From NCBI GenBank assembly GCA_977030845.1, contig OZ365118.1, forward strand, positions 16,306,001 to 16,370,000: a stretch of DNA of 64,000 bases, given 5' to 3'. Position numbers and translations under genes: made by a program. The DNA is from Fimbriosthenelais zetlandica (taxonomy: Eukaryota). Numbering within the stretch: the first letter of the stretch is position 1; every line of letters begins with the position of its first letter. Below, one piece after another: positions 2,421 to 46,084 of this stretch. The notes below the pieces were generated by a model. It worked only from the letters and a program-made list of their open reading frames with translations. It had not been told where the DNA came from and made no database searches.

Positions 2421-5400
2421 GTATAGCGGATCCAGGATTTCAGCAAAAGTTCAATGTGAGTTGGCCTATGCATGTCACTATGAGTATGGAAGTCCCTGCA
2501 TGTGAGCATGAACTTCCATGAACTGCTTGAGAAGTTCCATGAACTTTATCTCATTAAGTTTCACCCTTTGATCCAGTAATGAAAGCTAAGGAGACTACTC
2601 ATGTAAACGGGTCTGCATGTTGATAACAACAAATCAATGCCTCTATAAAGTCAGAGTAAGACATCTGACCTTGCCACAAGGTAAATAAATCCCCTAAAAA
2701 CTGGCCAGTTTGATTTCCCCTGGTAGAGTCACTCACATCAGCTCTTTGTACCTGAGACGCGGAGTTAAAGTGGAGCAGATACAATCAATAAGTGTATGGA
2801 GAGTGGGGCAAAATACACCCCTGAGTCTTTTGTTCTGGATTCTATGGAACGTCCCAGAAGACTTAAACTGCAGGTCGCTTCAAAAAGAATTACTAGTCAG
2901 TATCCAAGAGTTACAAGTTTCTTGATACATTTGTATACTTTCTTCGCCCACAAGTAACATTCGAGAAGGCCTGGACCCGCCGCCTTCTATCCCTCCGGTC
3001 TCAAATATTATCTAATTTGTCATCTTTTATGGTTCAGGTACTTTCAGATGTACCTTTCCTTCCTTGAGAACATTAAGAGGTAAAGAATGGAGGTCTTGGT
3101 TTGTAAACAGTATAAGGAGCCGCCAGACAGAGTGGTTGAATGCTTTATTGAAATGTGCATGATCTACTTGCATGTCTCAATACATTACCTGAGTGAGCAG
3201 ATCAGGTTATTATTAGACCACAACTGCTCCCCCTGCCGACCAAACAGTACAAAAATAGACGGCAAACATACTCCCTCCATCTAAGAATAGACTCTATACC
3301 ACTAACGTGACTTTCTTGCCATTAACTCATATCTGTCTTGGCCTTTGTGTAATTAATAATTTCAACATTTTCTTGGAATCTTATCTAAAGAACTGATGAA
3401 CATGGCTAGTCAGGTAGGAAGCAGTGTCACTAAGAATGTAATTTAAAATGCCCTAGGGCATTGGGAAAAGTTCGAATTTCAAGCATCCTGCAGTCTACTA
3501 TAGTGATTCAGAAATCCATTCCATCCGGTAGAGATGGAACCAGATATACTCTAATGACATTTCTAATTAAATACTAATATGCATTTAGAATCAAAATCTC
3601 AAAGTCTAACGAGTTGAGTTGATAAGAATCTAATGTGAGAGGCTCCAAATTCCAGGCTTTCCAGACACATTTCAATCAAATCAACGTATATACATATGTT
3701 TCAACCGAGTAAACAACTATATAAAAACAGGTTTACACGGATGGTAAAAGATCTGAGACTGCGTGATAGAGTAGGCCTACCTTTCTGAAGGGAGATCATT
3801 AGTTAGAAGGCTTGCCTCATCCAAGCCATTACTTAGAAGTTTCACTTCATCCATGCAATTTTCTAGAAGCCAGCAAGTGGGGGATTCAGACATCTGCTTC
3901 CTTTAATATCTGTTGCTTGTCTTTTGATTTGAAAATTACTTCTGTGAAGACATATAAAGAGATATATCACCTCTAGAGAAGGAATCTGAGGGATGATGAA
4001 TTTGCAGAGCCTTATATCCACTCAGCGATTTGGCAGTTTGATTAAGCAGTATAGGCTGGTTCTCTGGCATCATGCGGAAAACAACATTTGGAATTAGGTG
4101 ACTATGTAAAATGAACTGCCAAATTTAAGACTCAGTCATGTGGGGCACTTCTTCGAGAAGTGGTCAATAGAAAACTAGGTTGCAAGCATACATTGTGACT
4201 AGTATAAAATCGGTCTTTCGGAATAGCTTTACCTATGAAAGAGCAACTTTGAGCAGACATGAGCAGAAGTCTCCACAACACGAGCTGCTCTTGCTCTAAG
4301 AAGCAGAACAGGCTGCTATCTGATAGCCTTCCCACCCAAACAGAACCTCGCAGTTCTGTCCTGGCAGACCATGTCACACTTGCTTCTATGAAGTTAGAGG
4401 CAGGGTGTTTGTGGAGGGTTTTATGTGTTAGATATAGCTTTGCTTTGGCCTCAGAATGTCCTTAGTCATCGCATTAAAACCGTCCTCTGAAGCATTACCA
4501 TTTATCAAACCGCCTTCTCCTTACACTGTCTGCGAGTAGGAGCACTCTCAGACACAGCCACAGACGGTAAATTATAGGCCAATATAACTTGTCACTGCTA
4601 CAGCTTTTACACTTTTAAATGTGTTATCAGTATGAAAACAAGGCTTTGTTAGAAACGACAGGCATTGAGGCATCTTAACACTTACGAGTAAGATCCACAT
4701 TTACTCATATACTGCCCAACAAAGGAAGACAATTCTCACGTCTTCACAATAACAGGTTCCATTTCTCACTCCATCAATAAGTGGATTGTTCGTTTCATCA
4801 GAAGAAAACAATCTTCTCTTAAAACATTTCAGCTTTTCTTGCTGAGAACACTCTTCAACTAAAAGTGTTTGTGAACTGTTTTTTGAAAGGACACTTAAGT
4901 TCTCTTGATTTAAAACTGTGGAGCAACATGAGAATGGAGAATTCAAAGGGACACAGTGAGATTGGCTTTGAAAGGTACAGCCACACTCAAGCGATTTGAA
5001 CGACCGATTGCCTCAATGGGAACCCTTTCCTTATATCAAATACCAAGCACCGTTTCCACGATTGTTCAACATTCTTCCCAAAACATTTTCAAAATTTCTC
5101 ACTTTCCTTTACCGTCCAGTCCAGCTGACTGATATCAAAGGCCAGCCATGTCCTCTGCCTATGGCAAGAGGTATAGAGAAGATCAGTCAAATTATGTGCC
5201 GAAAGCGTGTTTCCTAATCGTCCTGAGCTCGTAGAAAAATTGCTGATTCGCTATTAAACAACTATTCATATTAACAGGGCACAAGTAGGACCCTGGTGCC
5301 GTTTTTTAAATACACATGTCAGAGATTTAAAGCAAGGTATGATATGATTTAAGAAAACAGGGGAATATTTGTGTGGGAAGGCTTCCACCTCACACCACTC

Positions 5401-40454: not shown

Positions 40455-40550
40455 TCTGTCTCAATCCCCCTCTCAACTGTATCTCTTTCTCTCCTCCACA
40501 TGTCTATCTGCTAGCTCTCTCCTTTCTCAGTATCTCTGTCACTCTCACTC

Positions 40551-40585
<35 letters not shown>
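40455..40585. repeat. CT-rich tract ending in a pure (CT)n run (~40554-40585)
   Basis: Direct reading. Confidence 0.95.
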
Positions 40586-40810: not shown

Positions 40811-40929
40811 TAATCAAAAATTAAGTTAAACTTACGTTAGTAATTTGAAGCTTAATTAGGATTATACAAGCCATATAGGCTTATGGGGGGGTCAGGTGAG
40901 AAGGCGCTGGTGCGTGTGTAAGAGGTCAG
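40811..40929 (-). repeat. Right ITR (40860-40929) plus 49-bp right extension (40811-40859) of the DIRS element
   Basis: Ends ...TTTTTGATTA on the - strand; its outer 88 bp are perfectly complementary to the ICR. Confidence 0.88.
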
Positions 40930-41080
40930 CATTTAATCATCCCGGAGAAGTGATCCTAACCAATTGGGTCAGGAATTTGTCAGTTTTATCCCCTACATCT
41001 AAAACTGAAATGTAGCTAGCTTCATACTAGCTATTTGGTCCCAAGTAGATCTATACTTGAGACGGGTAGGGTGAGGTGGG

Positions 41081-41207
41081 CACCTGACCCCCCCATAAGC
41101 CTATATGGCTTGTATAATCCTAATTAAGCTTCAAATTACTAACGTAAGTTTAACTTAATTTTTGATTATACTTCGCCCCATAGGCTACTAGGGGGCGACA
41201 GGTGAGA
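41081..41207 (+). repeat. Internal complementary region (ICR): the + strand reads as the circle junction (right end + left start overlapping at GATTA, 41164-41168)
   Basis: Exact match to both termini as listed for the element. Confidence 0.88.
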
Positions 41208-41479
41208 TTTTAACTTATTAGGGGAACTTCTCCGGGACTTCTACTATATGACATATAGATAGGTCCTAGTAGGAATAATTTTCCTCTTTTTCAGGATGAA
41301 TTTAACGAGGAACTCGACCTAGTGATTTTGTTCATCATAAAGTACTAGGTTTCTTTCAAATTATGAGCTTTAAGTTATCACTTATAATTGGAGTTGATAT
41401 TGATATCAATTGGGTTATCACTAGCTATCAGATCATCTTTATGATCATTAGTGATTTTATTTTAGGGAAGCAGTGGAGT

Positions 41480-41900
41480 TGGTCTTTATTTGGAAACTTG
41501 GGTTTCATTCATGCGAGCATGACCAAGCCTCCTGACATGATAGAACCTTTGTCCTTAAGCTTTCATGAGACGTTATGGAGATCAATTCTCCAATGTAGAG
41601 GTGTATCATAATTTAACTAATTACGAAAGCATTTGGACATGCAATATCTGTCTATAATATGGATATACTAGTATATATTGGACTATGCCAACACTTTTTT
41701 GCCTAAATATTTTAGGTCGACTCTACTTGTTTCACAGTACCGGTATTCATGGGAACACAAGTTCAAGGTTCACACAGATGTGTGGCTTTTTACAAGTAAT
41801 TGTGTCACCCTGAGCATCAATAAGGTATGGAAGAACTTTATGGCATCTTGTCATATCGTGTTCGAGTGAGGTAAAGCTGGAAGCACCTTCCAACTCTAGC
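41480..41900 (-). pseudogene. Possible tyrosine recombinase remnant
   Basis: FFHTLLMLRVTQLL (box I-like LR.SEL) near 41790-41840; SHESLR / YHVRRLG (H-x-x-R-like) near 41520-41570 in other frames; the position just before the ICR is as expected. Weak. Confidence 0.28.
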
Positions 41901-42118
41901 TTACACCTACTACCACGATTCCACAGTGTCTGTCCAGGACGTTTCGGATGCTCGCATGGTATTTAGATGAGGTACATATACAAGTACTGTTAATTTTTTG
42001 ACAGAGTCTTAGGCAGGGCGGACATTGTAAGGTGTGAGGGGCCAATGTCGTTATTACTGCAAGTATGAAGGAAATATACTGCGGCCAGAAATTACAACAG
42101 GCTGTGGTGGGAATTTGG

Positions 42119-42667
42119 TTAAAAGACATACAATTTTCTGTAGATGTATTGAGGACATGCCGGGAGATGTGAATGGATTATAGGGTCCTTGCGATTGGGG
42201 GATGATAACATTTTTTGACTTTTTAAGTCCCGTGATCTTAATTTTTTAGATCTAAAATATACGCTTTTGGACAATGGATAGTTGGATAAATTAGCCAGTT
42301 AAATAATCGAAATTTCGCCAGTAATATCGCCGGCAATGACGTCAGTAAACTTAAAACTTTTTAGGACCTTTTGGACCTTTTTAAGCGCTTAAATCTTTAC
42401 ATGCCGTGTGGGAACCCCGGAATAGTGAGTCATCCAGAAGTTTTGAAGTTTCTTAACTGGTCTTAAAGATGTTAGACCACAGGTAATTCTTCCAGCCCTG
42501 GTCGTTAGTCTTACTCGAATAGGGCAATTCCCCTTCTTTCGAATAGAAGACTTGCCTCAATCTCCAGTTTCGTCTGGAAACATTGAATTAAATTCTTGGT
42601 TTTCTTTGCTCACAGCTTATGTGGGGTTTTCATGGGAGTCAAAAATAAATGTAAACATGTCGTTTAT
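42119..42667 (-). pseudogene. Degenerate frame resembling the DIRS1 methyltransferase-like (MT) region
   Basis: 183 codons, 4 internal stops; DMFTFIFDSHEN...FNSMFPDE resembles the DLFAS..N....F.S..PD motif and lies downstream of RT as expected. Confidence 0.35.
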
Positions 42668-43633
42668 TTAATAGGAGGGAGAGCACAGTTTTATTATATG
42701 TTCCTGTGAATAAGTATTACTGATGGGGCCTCTTCACTGGGTAGACCTGGGAGATGATTACATTTTTGTGGTAGTCTTGAATGATGTTAGATTATTTAGG
42801 ATTACCGTGTAATCATAGCCAAAGTGGCTATAATTGGTTCTTCAGGTTCCAGGAGTATTCAGGTAAGAGGTATAGAAGGACTGATTCACTGGGTATATAG
42901 TGCTAAAGAGTGCCTTAGAATAACAAACATAGGGTCCTATGATGAGGACAGTTTCCCTGCGTGATAATCATTTACTATGATAAGGGATTTAGATTAAGTT
43001 TATAGGTTGCTGCCTAGGCAATGTTTCCAAAATAGGAAAATTAACATACTAGGATCTATATCAATTTGGCCAAGCTCATTTAGTTCAATACAGTGACATG
43101 TATAATCGATTTATATCGATACGTTTGACCGTTTGATCGTGAAGGTTTCACGAGGGAGTACCACTGTGGCTATTAGTGGTTTTATTTTACGTAAAAGGGT
43201 ATTCGGATAACGATTGGAGTATCAGTTTAGTTATCATTTCAAGGCTCGTCATTGAGTTAAATTTTGTCCTGTTTTCCCAGGAAAGTTTCCATAACTGACA
43301 AGTAATTGAGTAACTTTATATCCAATGTCAAGAAATAAGGCAGATTATAGTTGGATGAGTTGGGACAGAGGCGAGTCTGTACTATAATGTGGGTCTGCAG
43401 AACGACAGATAATACATTTTTTGATAGTAGGTTTCTGTTCAGGGTCTATTATGTTTTCTAGAAACACTTAGAAATGGTTCTGAATCATTCAGTGTTGTGT
43501 ACTTAAAAAAACCTACTCATCAAGCCTGAGCTTGAGTGTAATATTTGTCACTCGAGTTATACGTTAATTCACATCAATTTCTGAGGACTGATGGGGGTCT
43601 ACATTGTCTATATTCTCTGATGTCTAGTAAACG

Positions 43634-44371
43634 TCAAGATGAGATACGAATGGCCCAATGCATAGATGCATGCATGTCTAAGACATAAATCATAAAGACT
43701 TCATCTTCCAGACTTTGTAAAGAACGCTTCAGGTCAAAGCGTAACTTATAAGTTGATCTCTTTATTATAATTGTTACGAGTAGGGATTTCCGTGACCTAA
43801 TATAAGAAGACGTAGTGAATGAATGGTCATTGAGTCCCATGCCAGGCGATGAGGCTGTATTTATAGCGAGTAACGCTTGTGATATTGAAGGGGTAAACCC
43901 TTAGATCCCATGAGAGAAACTCAGTTTTAATTGGAGTATGACTGAAGTGGATGTCCTTAGACAGTAGAATAAATTAGTTATTCTATTGAATATACCAGTA
44001 AGTTTCACACTGAAATAATCAGGGCTTATATTACTTATGTCGCTAAACTCGATGTTCGATCTTGATTTTAAAGGGTCTGAGATACATTTACTGTCCACGT
44101 AAATACACTAAGCCACGACCCATAGACAGGGAGGACCTGTGAAGGGTTTAGGGAAAAGAGCGCCTTGTTTAAGACAAATGCTTAATGTAAGGAAAGTTTT
44201 TTGATGTAAACTTATATTGTATTGGACTATCTCGGAGTCCGTCTTAAGGTCCGCTTTTAATGGGCCCAAGAAAATCATTATTATTATTGTTCTTCTATAC
44301 GTGAGTATAAGTATGAGGGTGCTTCCTTCCAATATCTTGATATTAACCTCTAAAGAAAGGGAAAAATGGCG
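43634..44371 (-). pseudogene. Degenerate DIRS-type reverse transcriptase frame
   Basis: Three ORF-track ORFs (44108-44332, 43901-44098, 43634-43840) are one frame: 246 codons with only two internal stops in AT-rich DNA. Motif resemblances in order: EGSTLILIL (cf. DGS.R.ILDL), KADLKTD...SLHQKTFL (cf. K.DLKDAY...SHQKFL), KPFTGPP (cf. LPFG...P), CIYVDS (cf. YLDD, second Asp lost). By-eye alignment only. Confidence 0.6.
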
Positions 44372-44666
44372 TTAAGTTCTATGAAGGTTGCTGATTGTAA
44401 TTATATAGGGAACAGGACTGTAATTTCCGTCATATATCAGCCAACTTGTCTGGCGATTCGGACTTTGCTGGTAGGATCTCTCCTATCGGATTATCATACA
44501 GTTGTTGATCATCTTGTCCTATAATCGCGGTGGCTCGGGGGGTACCGCACAACTCCGGACACTGTCTGAGTGGCTGTGGGCACAGGGGTTAGACTGTGTT
44601 GAAAGGTAGTATTAGGTGAAAATGCAGTTTCTAAGTGACGTTTTCTTTAAGGAACCTGTTGATGTT

Positions 44667-44888
44667 GGTTTAATTTCTGTTAATTAATAGGATTAATTAC
44701 TAACTGTCCATAAATAAACCATCTCCAAGTATGGTTTAATTTCTGTTAATTAATTGGATTAATTACCAACTGTCCATAAGTAAACCATCTCCCTGTATGG
44801 TTTAATTTCTGTTAATTAATAGGATTAATTACCAACTGTCCACAATTAAACCATCTCCAAGTATGGTTTAATTTCTGTTAATTAATAG
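44667..44888. repeat. 66-bp tandem repeat x ~3.4 inside the DIRS element
   Basis: Units start at 44667, 44733, 44799 and 44865 (ggtttaatttctgttaattaataggattaattaccaactgtcc...aaaccatctccaagtat), with a few substitutions between units. Confidence 0.95.
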
Positions 44889-46012
44889 AATGAAATTCAG
44901 TAAACCATTCTCAGGTCAGTCTAATTAGGGAGTTGAGAAGAATCGTCCTAGGTATTGTAGGCCTATTGGAATAATAAGGCCGTAGTACAGCACATGTGGA
45001 GAAGGTAGCACTGTCTCCTGCATCGTCCGAGTCGAGGGTGTAGGTATAATTCGCTATCACAACTGCATAACAATGCTGCTCAATGATACGTAATTCACTG
45101 TAAAAAATGGATCATTTTGAAGGAATTTGTCTCATCTTACTGTTGGTACCTTTCTGTATATTGGGTACCTTCAGATGGTGGTCCTATGAATTTGTGTTTA
45201 GATATTCATATCTTTTATGGACGTAAATGTCCGAAATATATTATTGAATTGAAGTGAAATTGTTGCGACACCCTGTAAGTGAACGGTACCGGTACTATTT
45301 ATGTACCAATGGTCAACAAGGTGTTGAAGCGTGGTTACAGTCCGCTACTATACGGTTCTGTTATGTAACACAATCAATTCGACAACGAGGTCACAATGGC
45401 TGTCAACTTGTCCTTGAGTTCACAGTAATGTAGAGTGTGAAATACCAAAATGATATATACATAAACGGGTCTGGAAGTCAGGGCCCATTTAGAGATAGAA
45501 ATCCACTCTTTTAGTAGAGGGATGGTCACACATTTAATTTGTCGTAGTTATGGCTATTGCCATTTTTGTACAACACATTACCTTGAGGTTTTGGACTTCT
45601 CTCCTTCTCCTCCTGCGACTGTGATAAGAGGGAGCCAATCCTGCCAAGTAATTGACGGCAGAAGTCGGTCTATATTCTGCTAGCTGGAGCCAGAACATTT
45701 CATGGTGCAAGGTCAGTTATAGCCTTGCTTCACAGCGTTCTCTTCTTCATAGCCTAGCCTTTGGACTCTTACGAGTCAACGATAGTAACCCCGCGGTTAT
45801 ATCGCCCTTGTCTCAAAAAACACCCAACAAATGACAAGTGTCTCTCCCCGTCTCCAAAACCTTGAGAAGCTCGAAGGCAGGAGTTGTATAAATGTAGAAT
45901 AGGCTCTTGGGGAGAGCAAGGCATGGTTGGTACACCGTCGGTATAGTTGAAAGTATCCACGTCCATTGATGGCAATCAAAATGCGACCTGCTTGTTCCAC
46001 GAACTCAGCTAA

Positions 46013-46084
46013 CTGACCTCTTACACACGCACCAGCGCCTTCTCACCTGTCGCCCCCTAGTAGCCTATGGGGCGAAGTATAATC
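46013..46084 (-). repeat. Left inverted terminal repeat of the DIRS element (begins GATTATACTTCGCCCC on the - strand)
   Basis: Inner 37 bp identical to the right ITR; outer 35 bp homologous but different (gattatac...ataggct...ggggg shared). Confidence 0.88.

What the first reader, a model, noticed from the sequence alone, without database searches (positions are those of the whole stretch)
41208..46012. Flawless termini around dead genes: a candidate full-size non-autonomous YR retroelement
There are zero mismatches across 169 aligned terminal/ICR positions, while every internal frame is interrupted and the RT catalytic motif reads YVDS rather than YxDD. Decay after insertion would hit termini and interior alike. 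Under the DIRS replication model the ICR and ends are re-synchronised at each cycle. The simplest inference is that an already dead ~5-kb genome was mobilised recently in trans by an intact relative, a LARD-like parasite of a DIRS family. Alternatives are gene conversion between the repeats or selection on the paired structure.
Basis: inference. Interest (0 to 1): 0.7.

Follow-up and report, generated by a model that had tools for sequence, protein, structure and literature searches.

The report
Young gene-less DIRS1-type retroelement copy
This 5.3-kb stretch is a very recent insertion of a jumping element that keeps the peculiar end structure of DIRS1-type retrotransposons but has no genes of its own, so it must be copied by enzymes borrowed from other elements; this is a tidy example of a known kind of genomic parasite, not a new mechanism.

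Summary
The termini are real and flawless: window 40811-46084 (minus strand, 5274 nt) has the full DIRS1-like layout. That layout is inverted terminal repeats, a 50-nt right extension, and an internal complementary region (ICR) pairing perfectly with both ends. The interior is not a set of lightly broken genes. Stop density is at random expectation in all six frames, and 30 open pieces give no Pfam RT, RNase H or recombinase hit. The "YVDS" string has no support as an RT motif.

The genome holds about 27 copies. Full-length copies differ by 0.2-0.6%, share the same stops and sit in unrelated flanks. This copy has 5 private substitutions, so zero mismatches in the termini is what youth alone predicts. 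Old copies have decayed termini, which argues against in-place gene conversion.

A sister family (5329 nt, about 6 copies) is also gene-less and also perfectly paired. It differs by 22 compensated substitutions in the ICR and termini. It keeps faint, collinear relics of a DIRS pol C-terminus and recombinase.

Intact DIRS1-like elements exist in the genome, but none shares these termini, so no helper is identified. No sequencing runs were listed, so expression and polymorphism are untested. The scan noted this same stretch once before (s1-228832).

The parts
40811..40860 (-). Right extension (rE), about 50 nt. It is the outermost part of the right terminus and pairs only with the ICR. The element ends ...TTTTTGATT(A).
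   Evidence: The end is defined by 23 copies with different flanks.
40861..40929 (-). Right inverted terminal repeat. The divergent outer part (to 40892) is about 70% like the left ITR. The conserved inner 37 nt (40893-40929) are identical to the left ITR.
40930..41080 (-). Spacer between the right ITR and the ICR. It is the loop of the 88-bp right-terminus/ICR pairing; the arms lie 182 nt apart.
   Evidence: I1. About 50-60% conserved in the sister family.
41081..41168 (-). Right ICR, 88 nt, 100% complementary to the right terminus 40811-40898.
41164..41207 (-). Left ICR, 44 nt, 100% complementary to the left terminus 46041-46084. It overlaps the right ICR on GATTA, which is the circle junction (core ATT/AAT).
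41208..46012 (-). Interior, 4805 nt, with no detectable gene. It has 76-122 stops per frame and the longest open stretch is 101 codons.
43637..44371 (-). A 243-codon stretch with only two stops, a possible last trace of an old reading frame. The stops are shared by all young copies, and one subfamily is frameshifted here.
44666..44888 (-). Tandem array of a 66-nt unit, 3.4 copies here. The copy number differs between subfamilies.
46013..46084 (-). Left inverted terminal repeat: conserved inner 37 nt (46013-46049) and divergent outer 35 nt (46050-46084). The element proper starts at ATTATACTTCG (46083). Base 46084 is flank that happens to match.

Best explanation
Window 40811-46084 (minus strand) is a young copy of a non-autonomous DIRS1-like retrotransposon family, here called family 1, with about 27 copies in this 447-Mb animal genome. 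It keeps every cis feature of the DIRS1-like group but encodes nothing. Those features are ITRs with a conserved inner and a divergent outer part, a right extension, and a two-part ICR whose halves overlap on the circle junction. It also has ATT at both ends and no target-site duplication.

Inferred mechanism, following the Cappello model as tested in Dictyostelium. A sub-genomic transcript is reverse-transcribed by RT supplied in trans. The cDNA ends anneal to the ICR and are rebuilt from it, which yields a circle. A tyrosine recombinase supplied in trans then recombines the junction ATT(A) with an (A/G)ATTA(A) site in the chromosome.

Because the ends are rewritten from the ICR at each cycle, ends and ICR co-vary between lineages and are perfect in every fresh insertion. 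After insertion they decay like any other DNA. The non-coding interior was inherited in that state from the master copy.

The lineage descends from an autonomous gag / RT-RH-MT / YR element, judged from relics in the sister family. It has since split into at least three gene-less families.

Shown: architecture, copy number, youth, independent insertions, lack of coding capacity, covariation, decay in old copies, relics in family 2, and presence of intact DIRS1-like elements in the genome. Inferred: the RNA intermediate, mobilisation in trans, and the identity of the helper.
For: Architecture. The 88-nt and 44-nt pairings are perfect and the 37-nt ITR core is identical on both sides. The dimensions are 35 (divergent ITR), 37 (conserved ITR), 50 (rE) and 44-88 (ICR), in a 5274-nt element. 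They almost equal those published for the mollusc element AcaDIRS1: 36, 32, 48, 45-88, 5222 bp, with ATT/ATT/AAT (PMC3266345 Table 3).

Copies. There are 55 hits of the 44-nt terminus and 52 of the ITR core, with none in the controls. Nine collinear copies exist, eight of them full length and one truncated at its 3' end. Three deletion or repeat-number subfamilies also exist. The flanks are unrelated. Eight aligned copies differ pairwise by 10-32 substitutions, and this copy has 5 private ones. The same stops occur in all young copies.

Junctions. Of 18 left ends, 15 read ATTA|TAC. Of 23 right ends, 20 read TTTTTG ATTA. There is no duplication beyond that core.

No coding capacity.

Covariation. 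Family 2 (L044, 5329 nt) has perfect 44-nt and 90-nt pairings. Relative to family 1 it carries 7+15 substitutions and 4 indel columns, all mirrored in the partner arm.

Decay after insertion. The old copy L043 has 2/88 mismatches in one pairing and only 88.9% identity in the other. Several older copies carry unmatched terminus mutations.

Relics. A 54-aa open piece of family 2 (L044:4885-5046) aligns over 48 residues to the pol C-terminus of an intact DIRS1-like element (E 4e-6 for that single comparison). The tblastn score of 28.1 bits exceeds 300 of 300 simulated sequences. YR-like hits lie collinear downstream (p 0.007), and the joint pattern occurs in 0 of 300 simulations.

Possible helpers. 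At least 9 copies of one family have 591-650-aa open pol frames and 3 copies of another have 674-675-aa ones. Both encode gag, RT-RH-MT and YR.

Literature. The ICR is essential and DIRS-1 RT acts in trans (PMC7192593).
Against: No helper with matching termini was found. Every element carrying these termini or their conserved blocks is gene-less. The two intact DIRS1-like families examined share no significant terminal similarity.

There is no RNA, cDNA or polymorphism evidence, because no sequencing run was listed and no empty-site haplotig exists in the assembly.

The pol and YR relics are weak, were found only in the sister family, and Pfam does not see them.

I could fetch only part of the genome's YR elements. 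An autonomous relative with more diverged termini may have been missed.
Confidence: 0.8

Rival explanations
1. DNA-only mobilisation. The element is a non-autonomous partner of a tyrosine recombinase that excises and re-integrates it as a double-stranded circle (Crypton-like), without reverse transcription. On this view the ICR is a leftover.
For: Integration at a short ATT(A) core without a target duplication is what any YR circle integration gives. The genome is rich in Crypton-type recombinases. There is no RNA evidence either way.
Against: Two diverged families keep 132-134 nt of ICR perfectly matched to both ends through 22 compensated substitutions and 4 indel columns. That is expected if the ends are copied from the ICR and has no role in a DNA-only cycle. 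Copy number has risen to about 27 with several subfamilies. The layout equals that of RT-encoding DIRS1-like elements. The sister family carries pol relics.
Confidence: 0.08
2. The perfect termini are maintained in place, either by gene conversion between the repeats or by selection on the paired structure at this locus. On this view they do not reflect recent insertion.
For: The paired arms could in principle form hairpins or cruciforms that favour conversion.
Against: This copy differs from its siblings by only 5 private substitutions over 5274 nt. About 0.3 changes are therefore expected in the paired bases, and nothing is left to explain. Older copies have unsynchronised mismatches: 2/88 mismatches and 88.9% identity in L043, plus several single-sided terminus variants. 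A third-family relic has 96.6% arms.
Confidence: 0.04
3. The element is cryptically autonomous. Its interior would encode proteins through introns, recoding or very short ORFs that ordinary scans miss.
For: One 243-codon stretch has only two stops.
Against: Stop density is at random expectation in all six frames, with no codon-position bias. No Pfam hit appears in 30 open pieces. The language-model recognition score is below that of real proteins. One active subfamily carries a frameshift inside the low-stop stretch. Similarity to family 2 appears equally on both strands and in all frames, so it is DNA-level similarity.
Confidence: 0.03
4. The copies are segmental duplications or an assembly artefact and not transposition products.
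For: None beyond the high identity.
Against: The copies lie on 12 contigs. Their flanks are unrelated right up to the same terminal bases. The flank of this copy is unique in the assembly.
Confidence: 0.01

Closest known systems
DIRS1-like retrotransposons of animals, in particular the mollusc-type termini described for AcaDIRS1 (Piednoel et al. 2011, PMC3266345)
   Same: It has ITRs with a conserved and a divergent part of about equal size, a right extension of about 50 nt, and left and right ICRs of 44-45 and 88 nt that overlap on the circle junction AAT. It has ATT at both ends, no target-site duplication and a size of about 5.2-5.3 kb.
   Different: It has no gag, no RT/RNase H/methyltransferase and no tyrosine recombinase. 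I could not compare sequences with AcaDIRS1 itself. The resemblance is in published dimensions only.
DIRS-1 of Dictyostelium discoideum (Cappello model; Malicki et al. 2020, PMC7192593)
   Same: It has non-identical inverted terminal repeats whose outer parts are repeated side by side in an ICR that is exactly complementary to both ends. In DIRS-1 those parts are 33 + 55 nt; here they are 44 + 88 nt. The paper shows that the ICR is essential and that the RT can act in trans, which is the mechanism assumed here.
   Different: DIRS-1 is autonomous, has much longer ITRs and inserts preferentially into other DIRS-1 copies. Here most insertions lie in unrelated single-copy flanks.
TOC1 of Chlamydomonas reinhardtii, cited as a non-autonomous DIRS retrotransposon (PMC9940879)
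   Same: It is a gene-less element of the YR-retrotransposon order that is active and varies in copy number, so it is mobilised in trans. From memory, not checked here: TOC1 is about 5.7 kb and also carries an internal tandem-repeat array.
   Different: It comes from a different kingdom. As far as I recall, TOC1 has a split-direct-repeat terminal arrangement and not ITR plus ICR; I did not check this here.
LARD / TRIM elements of LTR retrotransposons
   Same: They are non-coding derivatives that keep only the terminal cis signals and are copied by proteins of autonomous relatives. LARDs stay large, as this element does.
   Different: They have direct LTRs, a PBS and PPT, and DDE-integrase insertion with target duplications. 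None of these is present here.

Membership tests
DIRS1-like retrotransposons (order DIRS) | Inverted terminal repeats, imperfect in their outer part | tested here: met
   The inner 37 nt are identical left and right. The outer 35 nt are about 70% alike.
DIRS1-like retrotransposons (order DIRS) | An ICR near the 3' end whose 5' half complements the start of the left terminus and whose 3' half complements the end of the right terminus, with the halves adjacent or overlapping on the circle junction | tested here: met
   The pairings are 44 nt and 88 nt, both 100%, and overlap on GATTA. The definition is as in PMC8969392 and PMC3266345.
DIRS1-like retrotransposons (order DIRS) | A terminal extension that pairs only with the ICR | tested here: met
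   A 50-nt right extension, 40811-40860.
DIRS1-like retrotransposons (order DIRS) | The element begins and ends with the same NTT trinucleotide, complementary to the junction, and makes no target-site duplication | tested here: met
   ATT at both ends. Of 18 left ends 15 read ATTA, and of 23 right ends 20 do. The flanks are otherwise unrelated.
DIRS1-like retrotransposons (order DIRS) | Encodes gag, RT-RNase H-methyltransferase and a tyrosine recombinase | tested here: not met
   Stops are at random density and there is no Pfam or DIRS-protein match. The element is therefore a structural, non-autonomous member only.
DIRS1-like retrotransposons (order DIRS) | Descent from a coding DIRS element | tested here: inconclusive
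   There is no relic in this family. The collinear sister family has weak pol C-terminus and YR relics, which Pfam does not see.
Non-autonomous retroelement mobilised in trans (LARD/TOC1-like) | Multiple recent, independent insertions of a copy that cannot encode its own machinery | tested here: met
   About 27 copies at 99.4-99.8% identity, in different flanks, with shared stops.
Non-autonomous retroelement mobilised in trans (LARD/TOC1-like) | An autonomous partner with matching cis signals in the same genome | tested here: not met
   Intact DIRS1-like elements exist, but none has these termini.
Non-autonomous retroelement mobilised in trans (LARD/TOC1-like) | An RNA intermediate, or transcription of the element | not testable with these tools
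   No sequencing run was listed for this stretch.

The most novel reading that the evidence does not exclude
A whole clade of gene-less DIRS1-like elements, at least three families of which two are still active, has persisted and diversified for a long time purely by borrowing enzymes. During that time it kept its size (5274 and 5329 nt), its terminal and ICR geometry and a few internal patches, while the rest of the interior drifted to background similarity. That would imply cis requirements beyond the termini, such as a length or packaging constraint and internal signals. It would also imply helpers that tolerate unrelated terminal sequences, because no coding element with these termini exists in the assembly.
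Probability: 0.45. Interest if true: 0.55.

Novelty: new member of a known kind. Interest (0 to 1): 0.4.

Why it matters
Surveys of DIRS1-like elements look for the RT, MT and YR domains and so ignore gene-less copies by design (PMC3266345). This family shows that such copies can be among the most recently amplified YR-type elements sampled here from an animal genome, and they would be missed or mislabelled by domain-based annotation.

The pair of sister families is also a natural covariation experiment. Their 22 substitutions and 4 indel columns are all compensated between the ICR and the termini, and old insertions have decayed pairings. This supports, from sequence alone, the idea that the ends are rewritten from the ICR at each cycle and not kept matched in place.

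If a helper is identified, the system offers a clean donor/helper pair for studying which cis signals DIRS enzymes need.

Tried and rejected
1. RT reading of 'YVDS'. Pfam on the piece holding it and on its neighbours gave nothing at E up to 10. Intact DIRS pol proteins of this genome do not match the region. The atlas look-up gave a recognition score below that of real proteins and no usable hit. Rejected.

2. Helper by shared termini. I searched five patterns: the 44-nt terminus, the 37-nt ITR core, the 24-nt junction, the 23-nt conserved rICR block, and two gapped degenerate patterns. They returned only gene-less families 1-3 and fragments.

3. Longer copies as possible autonomous versions. 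L043 (7.3 kb) and L017 are old copies with insertions and no ORF. The 9.9-kb copy on C27 holds a nested, unrelated gag/YR retroelement.

4. Candidate helpers L046 and L047. Both are intact gag / RT-RH-MT / YR elements, but there is no DNA or protein similarity to the element. Terminal similarity to L047 is not convincing: p is 0.066 and 0.004, and the orientation relative to the junction is wrong. The left terminus of the L047 copy was not within reach.

5. Twelve YR loci from the Pfam scan. Most are Crypton-type (DUF3504), and none resembles the element.

6. Alternative genetic code. All three stop codons are frequent in every frame.

7. Rfam gave no match.

8. Reads. No run was listed. The empty-site search found no second haplotype.

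After that I fetched only small pieces.

10. I did not run the large protein searches. A decayed relic cannot reach significance in a library of billions of proteins, and targeted comparisons are more sensitive.
Full report
ANATOMY. The finding's coordinates (41208-46012) are the interior of an element that spans window 40811-46084 on the minus strand (5274 nt).

Read in element orientation, it starts with a 72-nt left terminus at 46084-46013. The outer 35 nt are GATTATACTTCGCCCC...GGCGA and the inner 37 nt are CAGGTGAGAAGG...GGTCAG.

The 4805-nt interior follows. Next comes an internal complementary region (ICR) at 41207-41081, then a 182-nt spacer that contains the inverted inner 37 nt. Last comes the right terminus, which ends at 40811.

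The repeat finder gives 40811-40898/41081-41168 (88 nt, 100%) and 41164-41207/46041-46084 (44 nt, 100%).

The two ICR halves overlap on GATTA. The outer parts of the left and right ITR are only about 70% alike, yet each matches its ICR half perfectly. The right terminus also has a 50-nt extension that pairs only with the ICR.

This is exactly the layout defined for DIRS1-like elements (PMC8969392; PMC3266345).

The measurements are 35 (divergent ITR), 37 (conserved ITR), 50 (rE), 44-88 (ICR), ATT at both ends, junction AAT, and 5274 nt. They are almost those tabulated for the Aplysia element AcaDIRS1: 36, 32, 48, 45-88, ATT/ATT/AAT, 5222 bp.

THE INTERIOR. The three sense frames carry 76, 103 and 113 stops within the 4805-nt interior, and the antisense frames 102-122. 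Sequence simulated with the same dinucleotide content gives 104 +/- 10.5 per frame. The longest open stretch is 101 codons, against a simulated mean of 104. Base composition shows no codon-position bias. All three stop codons are common in every frame.

Thirty open pieces of 36-93 aa on the sense strand gave no RT, RNase H, methyltransferase, recombinase or gag hit in Pfam.

I read the three sense frames through with X at stops and compared them with intact DIRS-type proteins taken from this genome. Nothing scored above the null for this family. By tblastn, pol had p=0.86, YR p=0.057 and gag p=0.97 against 300 simulated sequences.

The piece with 'CIYVDSKC' and the piece before it are among those without any hit. 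A language-model look-up scored the upstream piece below the level of real proteins.

The one anomaly is a 243-codon stretch with only two stops (43637-44371, minus strand). Simulations reach this 0.3-0.7% of the time, and the window size was chosen after seeing the data. It may be the last shadow of a reading frame. One active subfamily is frameshifted inside it, so it is not under coding selection.

COPIES. The genome (447 Mb, 79 contigs) holds 55 matches to the 44-nt terminus and 52 to the ITR core, with none for the reversed control patterns. That is about 27 elements.

BLAST of the whole element finds nine collinear copies, eight of them full length and one cut off at position 5188. It also finds six copies with extra 66-nt repeat units and six with extra units plus a 133-nt deletion. 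One copy has a 1.3-kb deletion, and several copies are older or interrupted.

The flanks are unrelated right up to the terminal bases, so these are independent insertions and not duplications.

Eight aligned copies differ pairwise by 10-32 substitutions (0.2-0.6%). The window copy has 5 substitutions not seen in the other seven. Every young copy has the same stops at the same places.

With 5 private changes in 5274 nt, about 0.3 are expected among the 338 paired bases. Zero mismatches is therefore the likely outcome (probability about 0.7) and needs no further explanation in this copy.

INSERTION SITES. Left junctions read flank-(A/G)ATTA|TACTTCG in 15 of 18 copies; three have TTTA or GTTA. 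Right junctions read ...TTTTTG ATTA followed by flank in 20 of 23 copies, and the next base is A in 17. The ICR reads TTTTTGATTATAC.

The element therefore carries ATT at both ends, one copy presumably from the circle and one from the target. The preferred target is about (A/G)ATTA(A), and there is no target duplication. This matches what is described for DIRS1-like elements and expected for recombinase-mediated integration of a circle.

IS THE PAIRING MAINTAINED, AND HOW? A search for the junction with three mismatches found a second family. I fetched one copy (L044, element 5329 nt). It has the same architecture with perfect 44-nt and 90-nt pairings and no ORF of 100 aa or more on the element's sense strand. 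It has about six copies.

The two families are collinear. Their termini and ICR are 70-85% identical. A few internal patches reach 60-85% (element positions about 2150-2340, 3060-3330 and 3593-3644). The rest is at background similarity.

Within the paired segments the families differ by 7+15 substitutions and 4 indel columns, and every one is mirrored in the partner arm. The inner ITR cores also differ between families but are identical left and right within each. An older subfamily of family 1 carries the same C-to-A change in both cores.

By contrast, the old copy L043 (92-97% identical to the window copy) has 2/88 mismatches in one pairing and only 88.9% identity in the other. Several older copies have terminus variants that their ICR lacks. 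A relic of a third family has 96.6% arms.

So the pairing is renewed when the element replicates and is not maintained in place. This fits the Cappello model, in which the ends are rebuilt on the ICR. The ICR has been shown to be essential in Dictyostelium DIRS-1 (PMC7192593).

ORIGIN. Family 2 keeps weak relics. A 54-aa open piece (L044:4885-5046) aligns over 48 residues to the conserved C-terminal block of the pol protein of an intact DIRS1-like element of this genome (FPPFS...GVLI.P.W...PW). The BLASTP E-value is 4e-6 for that single comparison.

In the unbiased tblastn of six proteins against the whole element it scores 28.1 bits, above all 300 simulated sequences. YR-like hits lie 300-600 nt downstream in the expected order (p 0.007), and the joint pattern occurs in 0 of 300 simulations. 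A small profile of three pol proteins gives the same hit, above all simulated elements. Pfam does not detect these pieces, so I treat them as probable, not certain.

They point to descent from a gag / RT-RH-MT / YR element and to a long gene-less history since.

HELPER. The genome has many YR elements. Most of those sampled are Crypton-type.

A scan for the Dam-like methyltransferase domain picks out two DIRS1-like families with open pol frames. One has at least 9 copies (591-650 aa) and the other has 3 copies (674-675 aa). Both encode gag, RT-RH-MT and YR. The first also has an 86-nt right-ICR/right-terminus pairing.

Neither shares sequence with the element, and neither shares convincing terminal similarity. 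No coding element carries the termini of families 1-3.

The helper is therefore unidentified.

I could not locate it and cannot say whether it is one of these families.

NOT TESTABLE HERE. No public run was listed for the stretch, so transcription, strand and presence/absence polymorphism are open. The flank of this copy is unique, with no empty second haplotype in the assembly.

COMPARISON AND VERDICT. In structure and insertion behaviour the element is a DIRS1-like element. It fails only the coding criterion, so it is a non-autonomous member.

Gene-less elements of the DIRS order are known: TOC1 of Chlamydomonas is cited as a non-autonomous DIRS retrotransposon (PMC9940879). In my literature searches I found no description of a gene-less ITR/ICR-type family in animals. 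Those searches cover open-access text only and not Repbase.

I rate it a new member of a known kind. It has some added value in the compensated sister families and in the long gene-less persistence at constant size.

All comparisons used natural copies, with X at stops where frames were read through.

Noticed in passing
L005 (G000:C10:49710053-49715243): One otherwise young copy (99.5%) stops at element position 5188. That is exactly where the ICR-templated outer part of the right terminus would begin. It may be an insertion of an incompletely restored cDNA or a later deletion. Its left flank happens to end in TTTGATTA, like the element's own right end.
   Followed up: partly
L012 5650-7095 (G000:C27:7154864-7159400): A 4.5-kb retroelement with a gag-like ORF and a 343-aa tyrosine recombinase is nested in the 66-nt repeat array of a family-1 copy, in opposite orientation. 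The insertion site is TTAAT|GTGCC. The same recombinase occurs intact at three or more other loci.
   Followed up: partly
L044 1569-6897 (G000:C10:36699168-36704496) and five further loci: This is sister family 2, a 5329-nt gene-less DIRS1-like element with perfect ICR pairing and faint pol and YR relics. A roughly 1-kb derivative seems to sit at G000:C13:15544211-15545237.
   Followed up: partly
G000:C13:13362306-13416769: Six Dam-domain hits of an intact DIRS1-like family lie on one strand, mostly about 7865 nt apart with two gaps of about 15.3 kb. This suggests a partly head-to-tail array of whole elements. The copy in L047 carries a long 178-nt tandem-repeat array in its 5' region.
   Followed up: no
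G000:C1:68879967-69584339: A cluster of at least five recombinase hits has the same 230-aa open frame and the same single TAA. It may be a tandemly amplified or segmentally duplicated YR element.
   Followed up: no
L031 384-1122: Nested 135-nt and 107-nt inverted repeats lie just upstream of a Crypton-type (DUF3504 + integrase) ORF, and a perfect 36-nt hairpin lies downstream.
   Followed up: no
window 40533-40584: A (TC)n microsatellite lies 230 nt outside the right end of the element. The window has no ORF of 200 aa or more on either strand.
   Followed up: no
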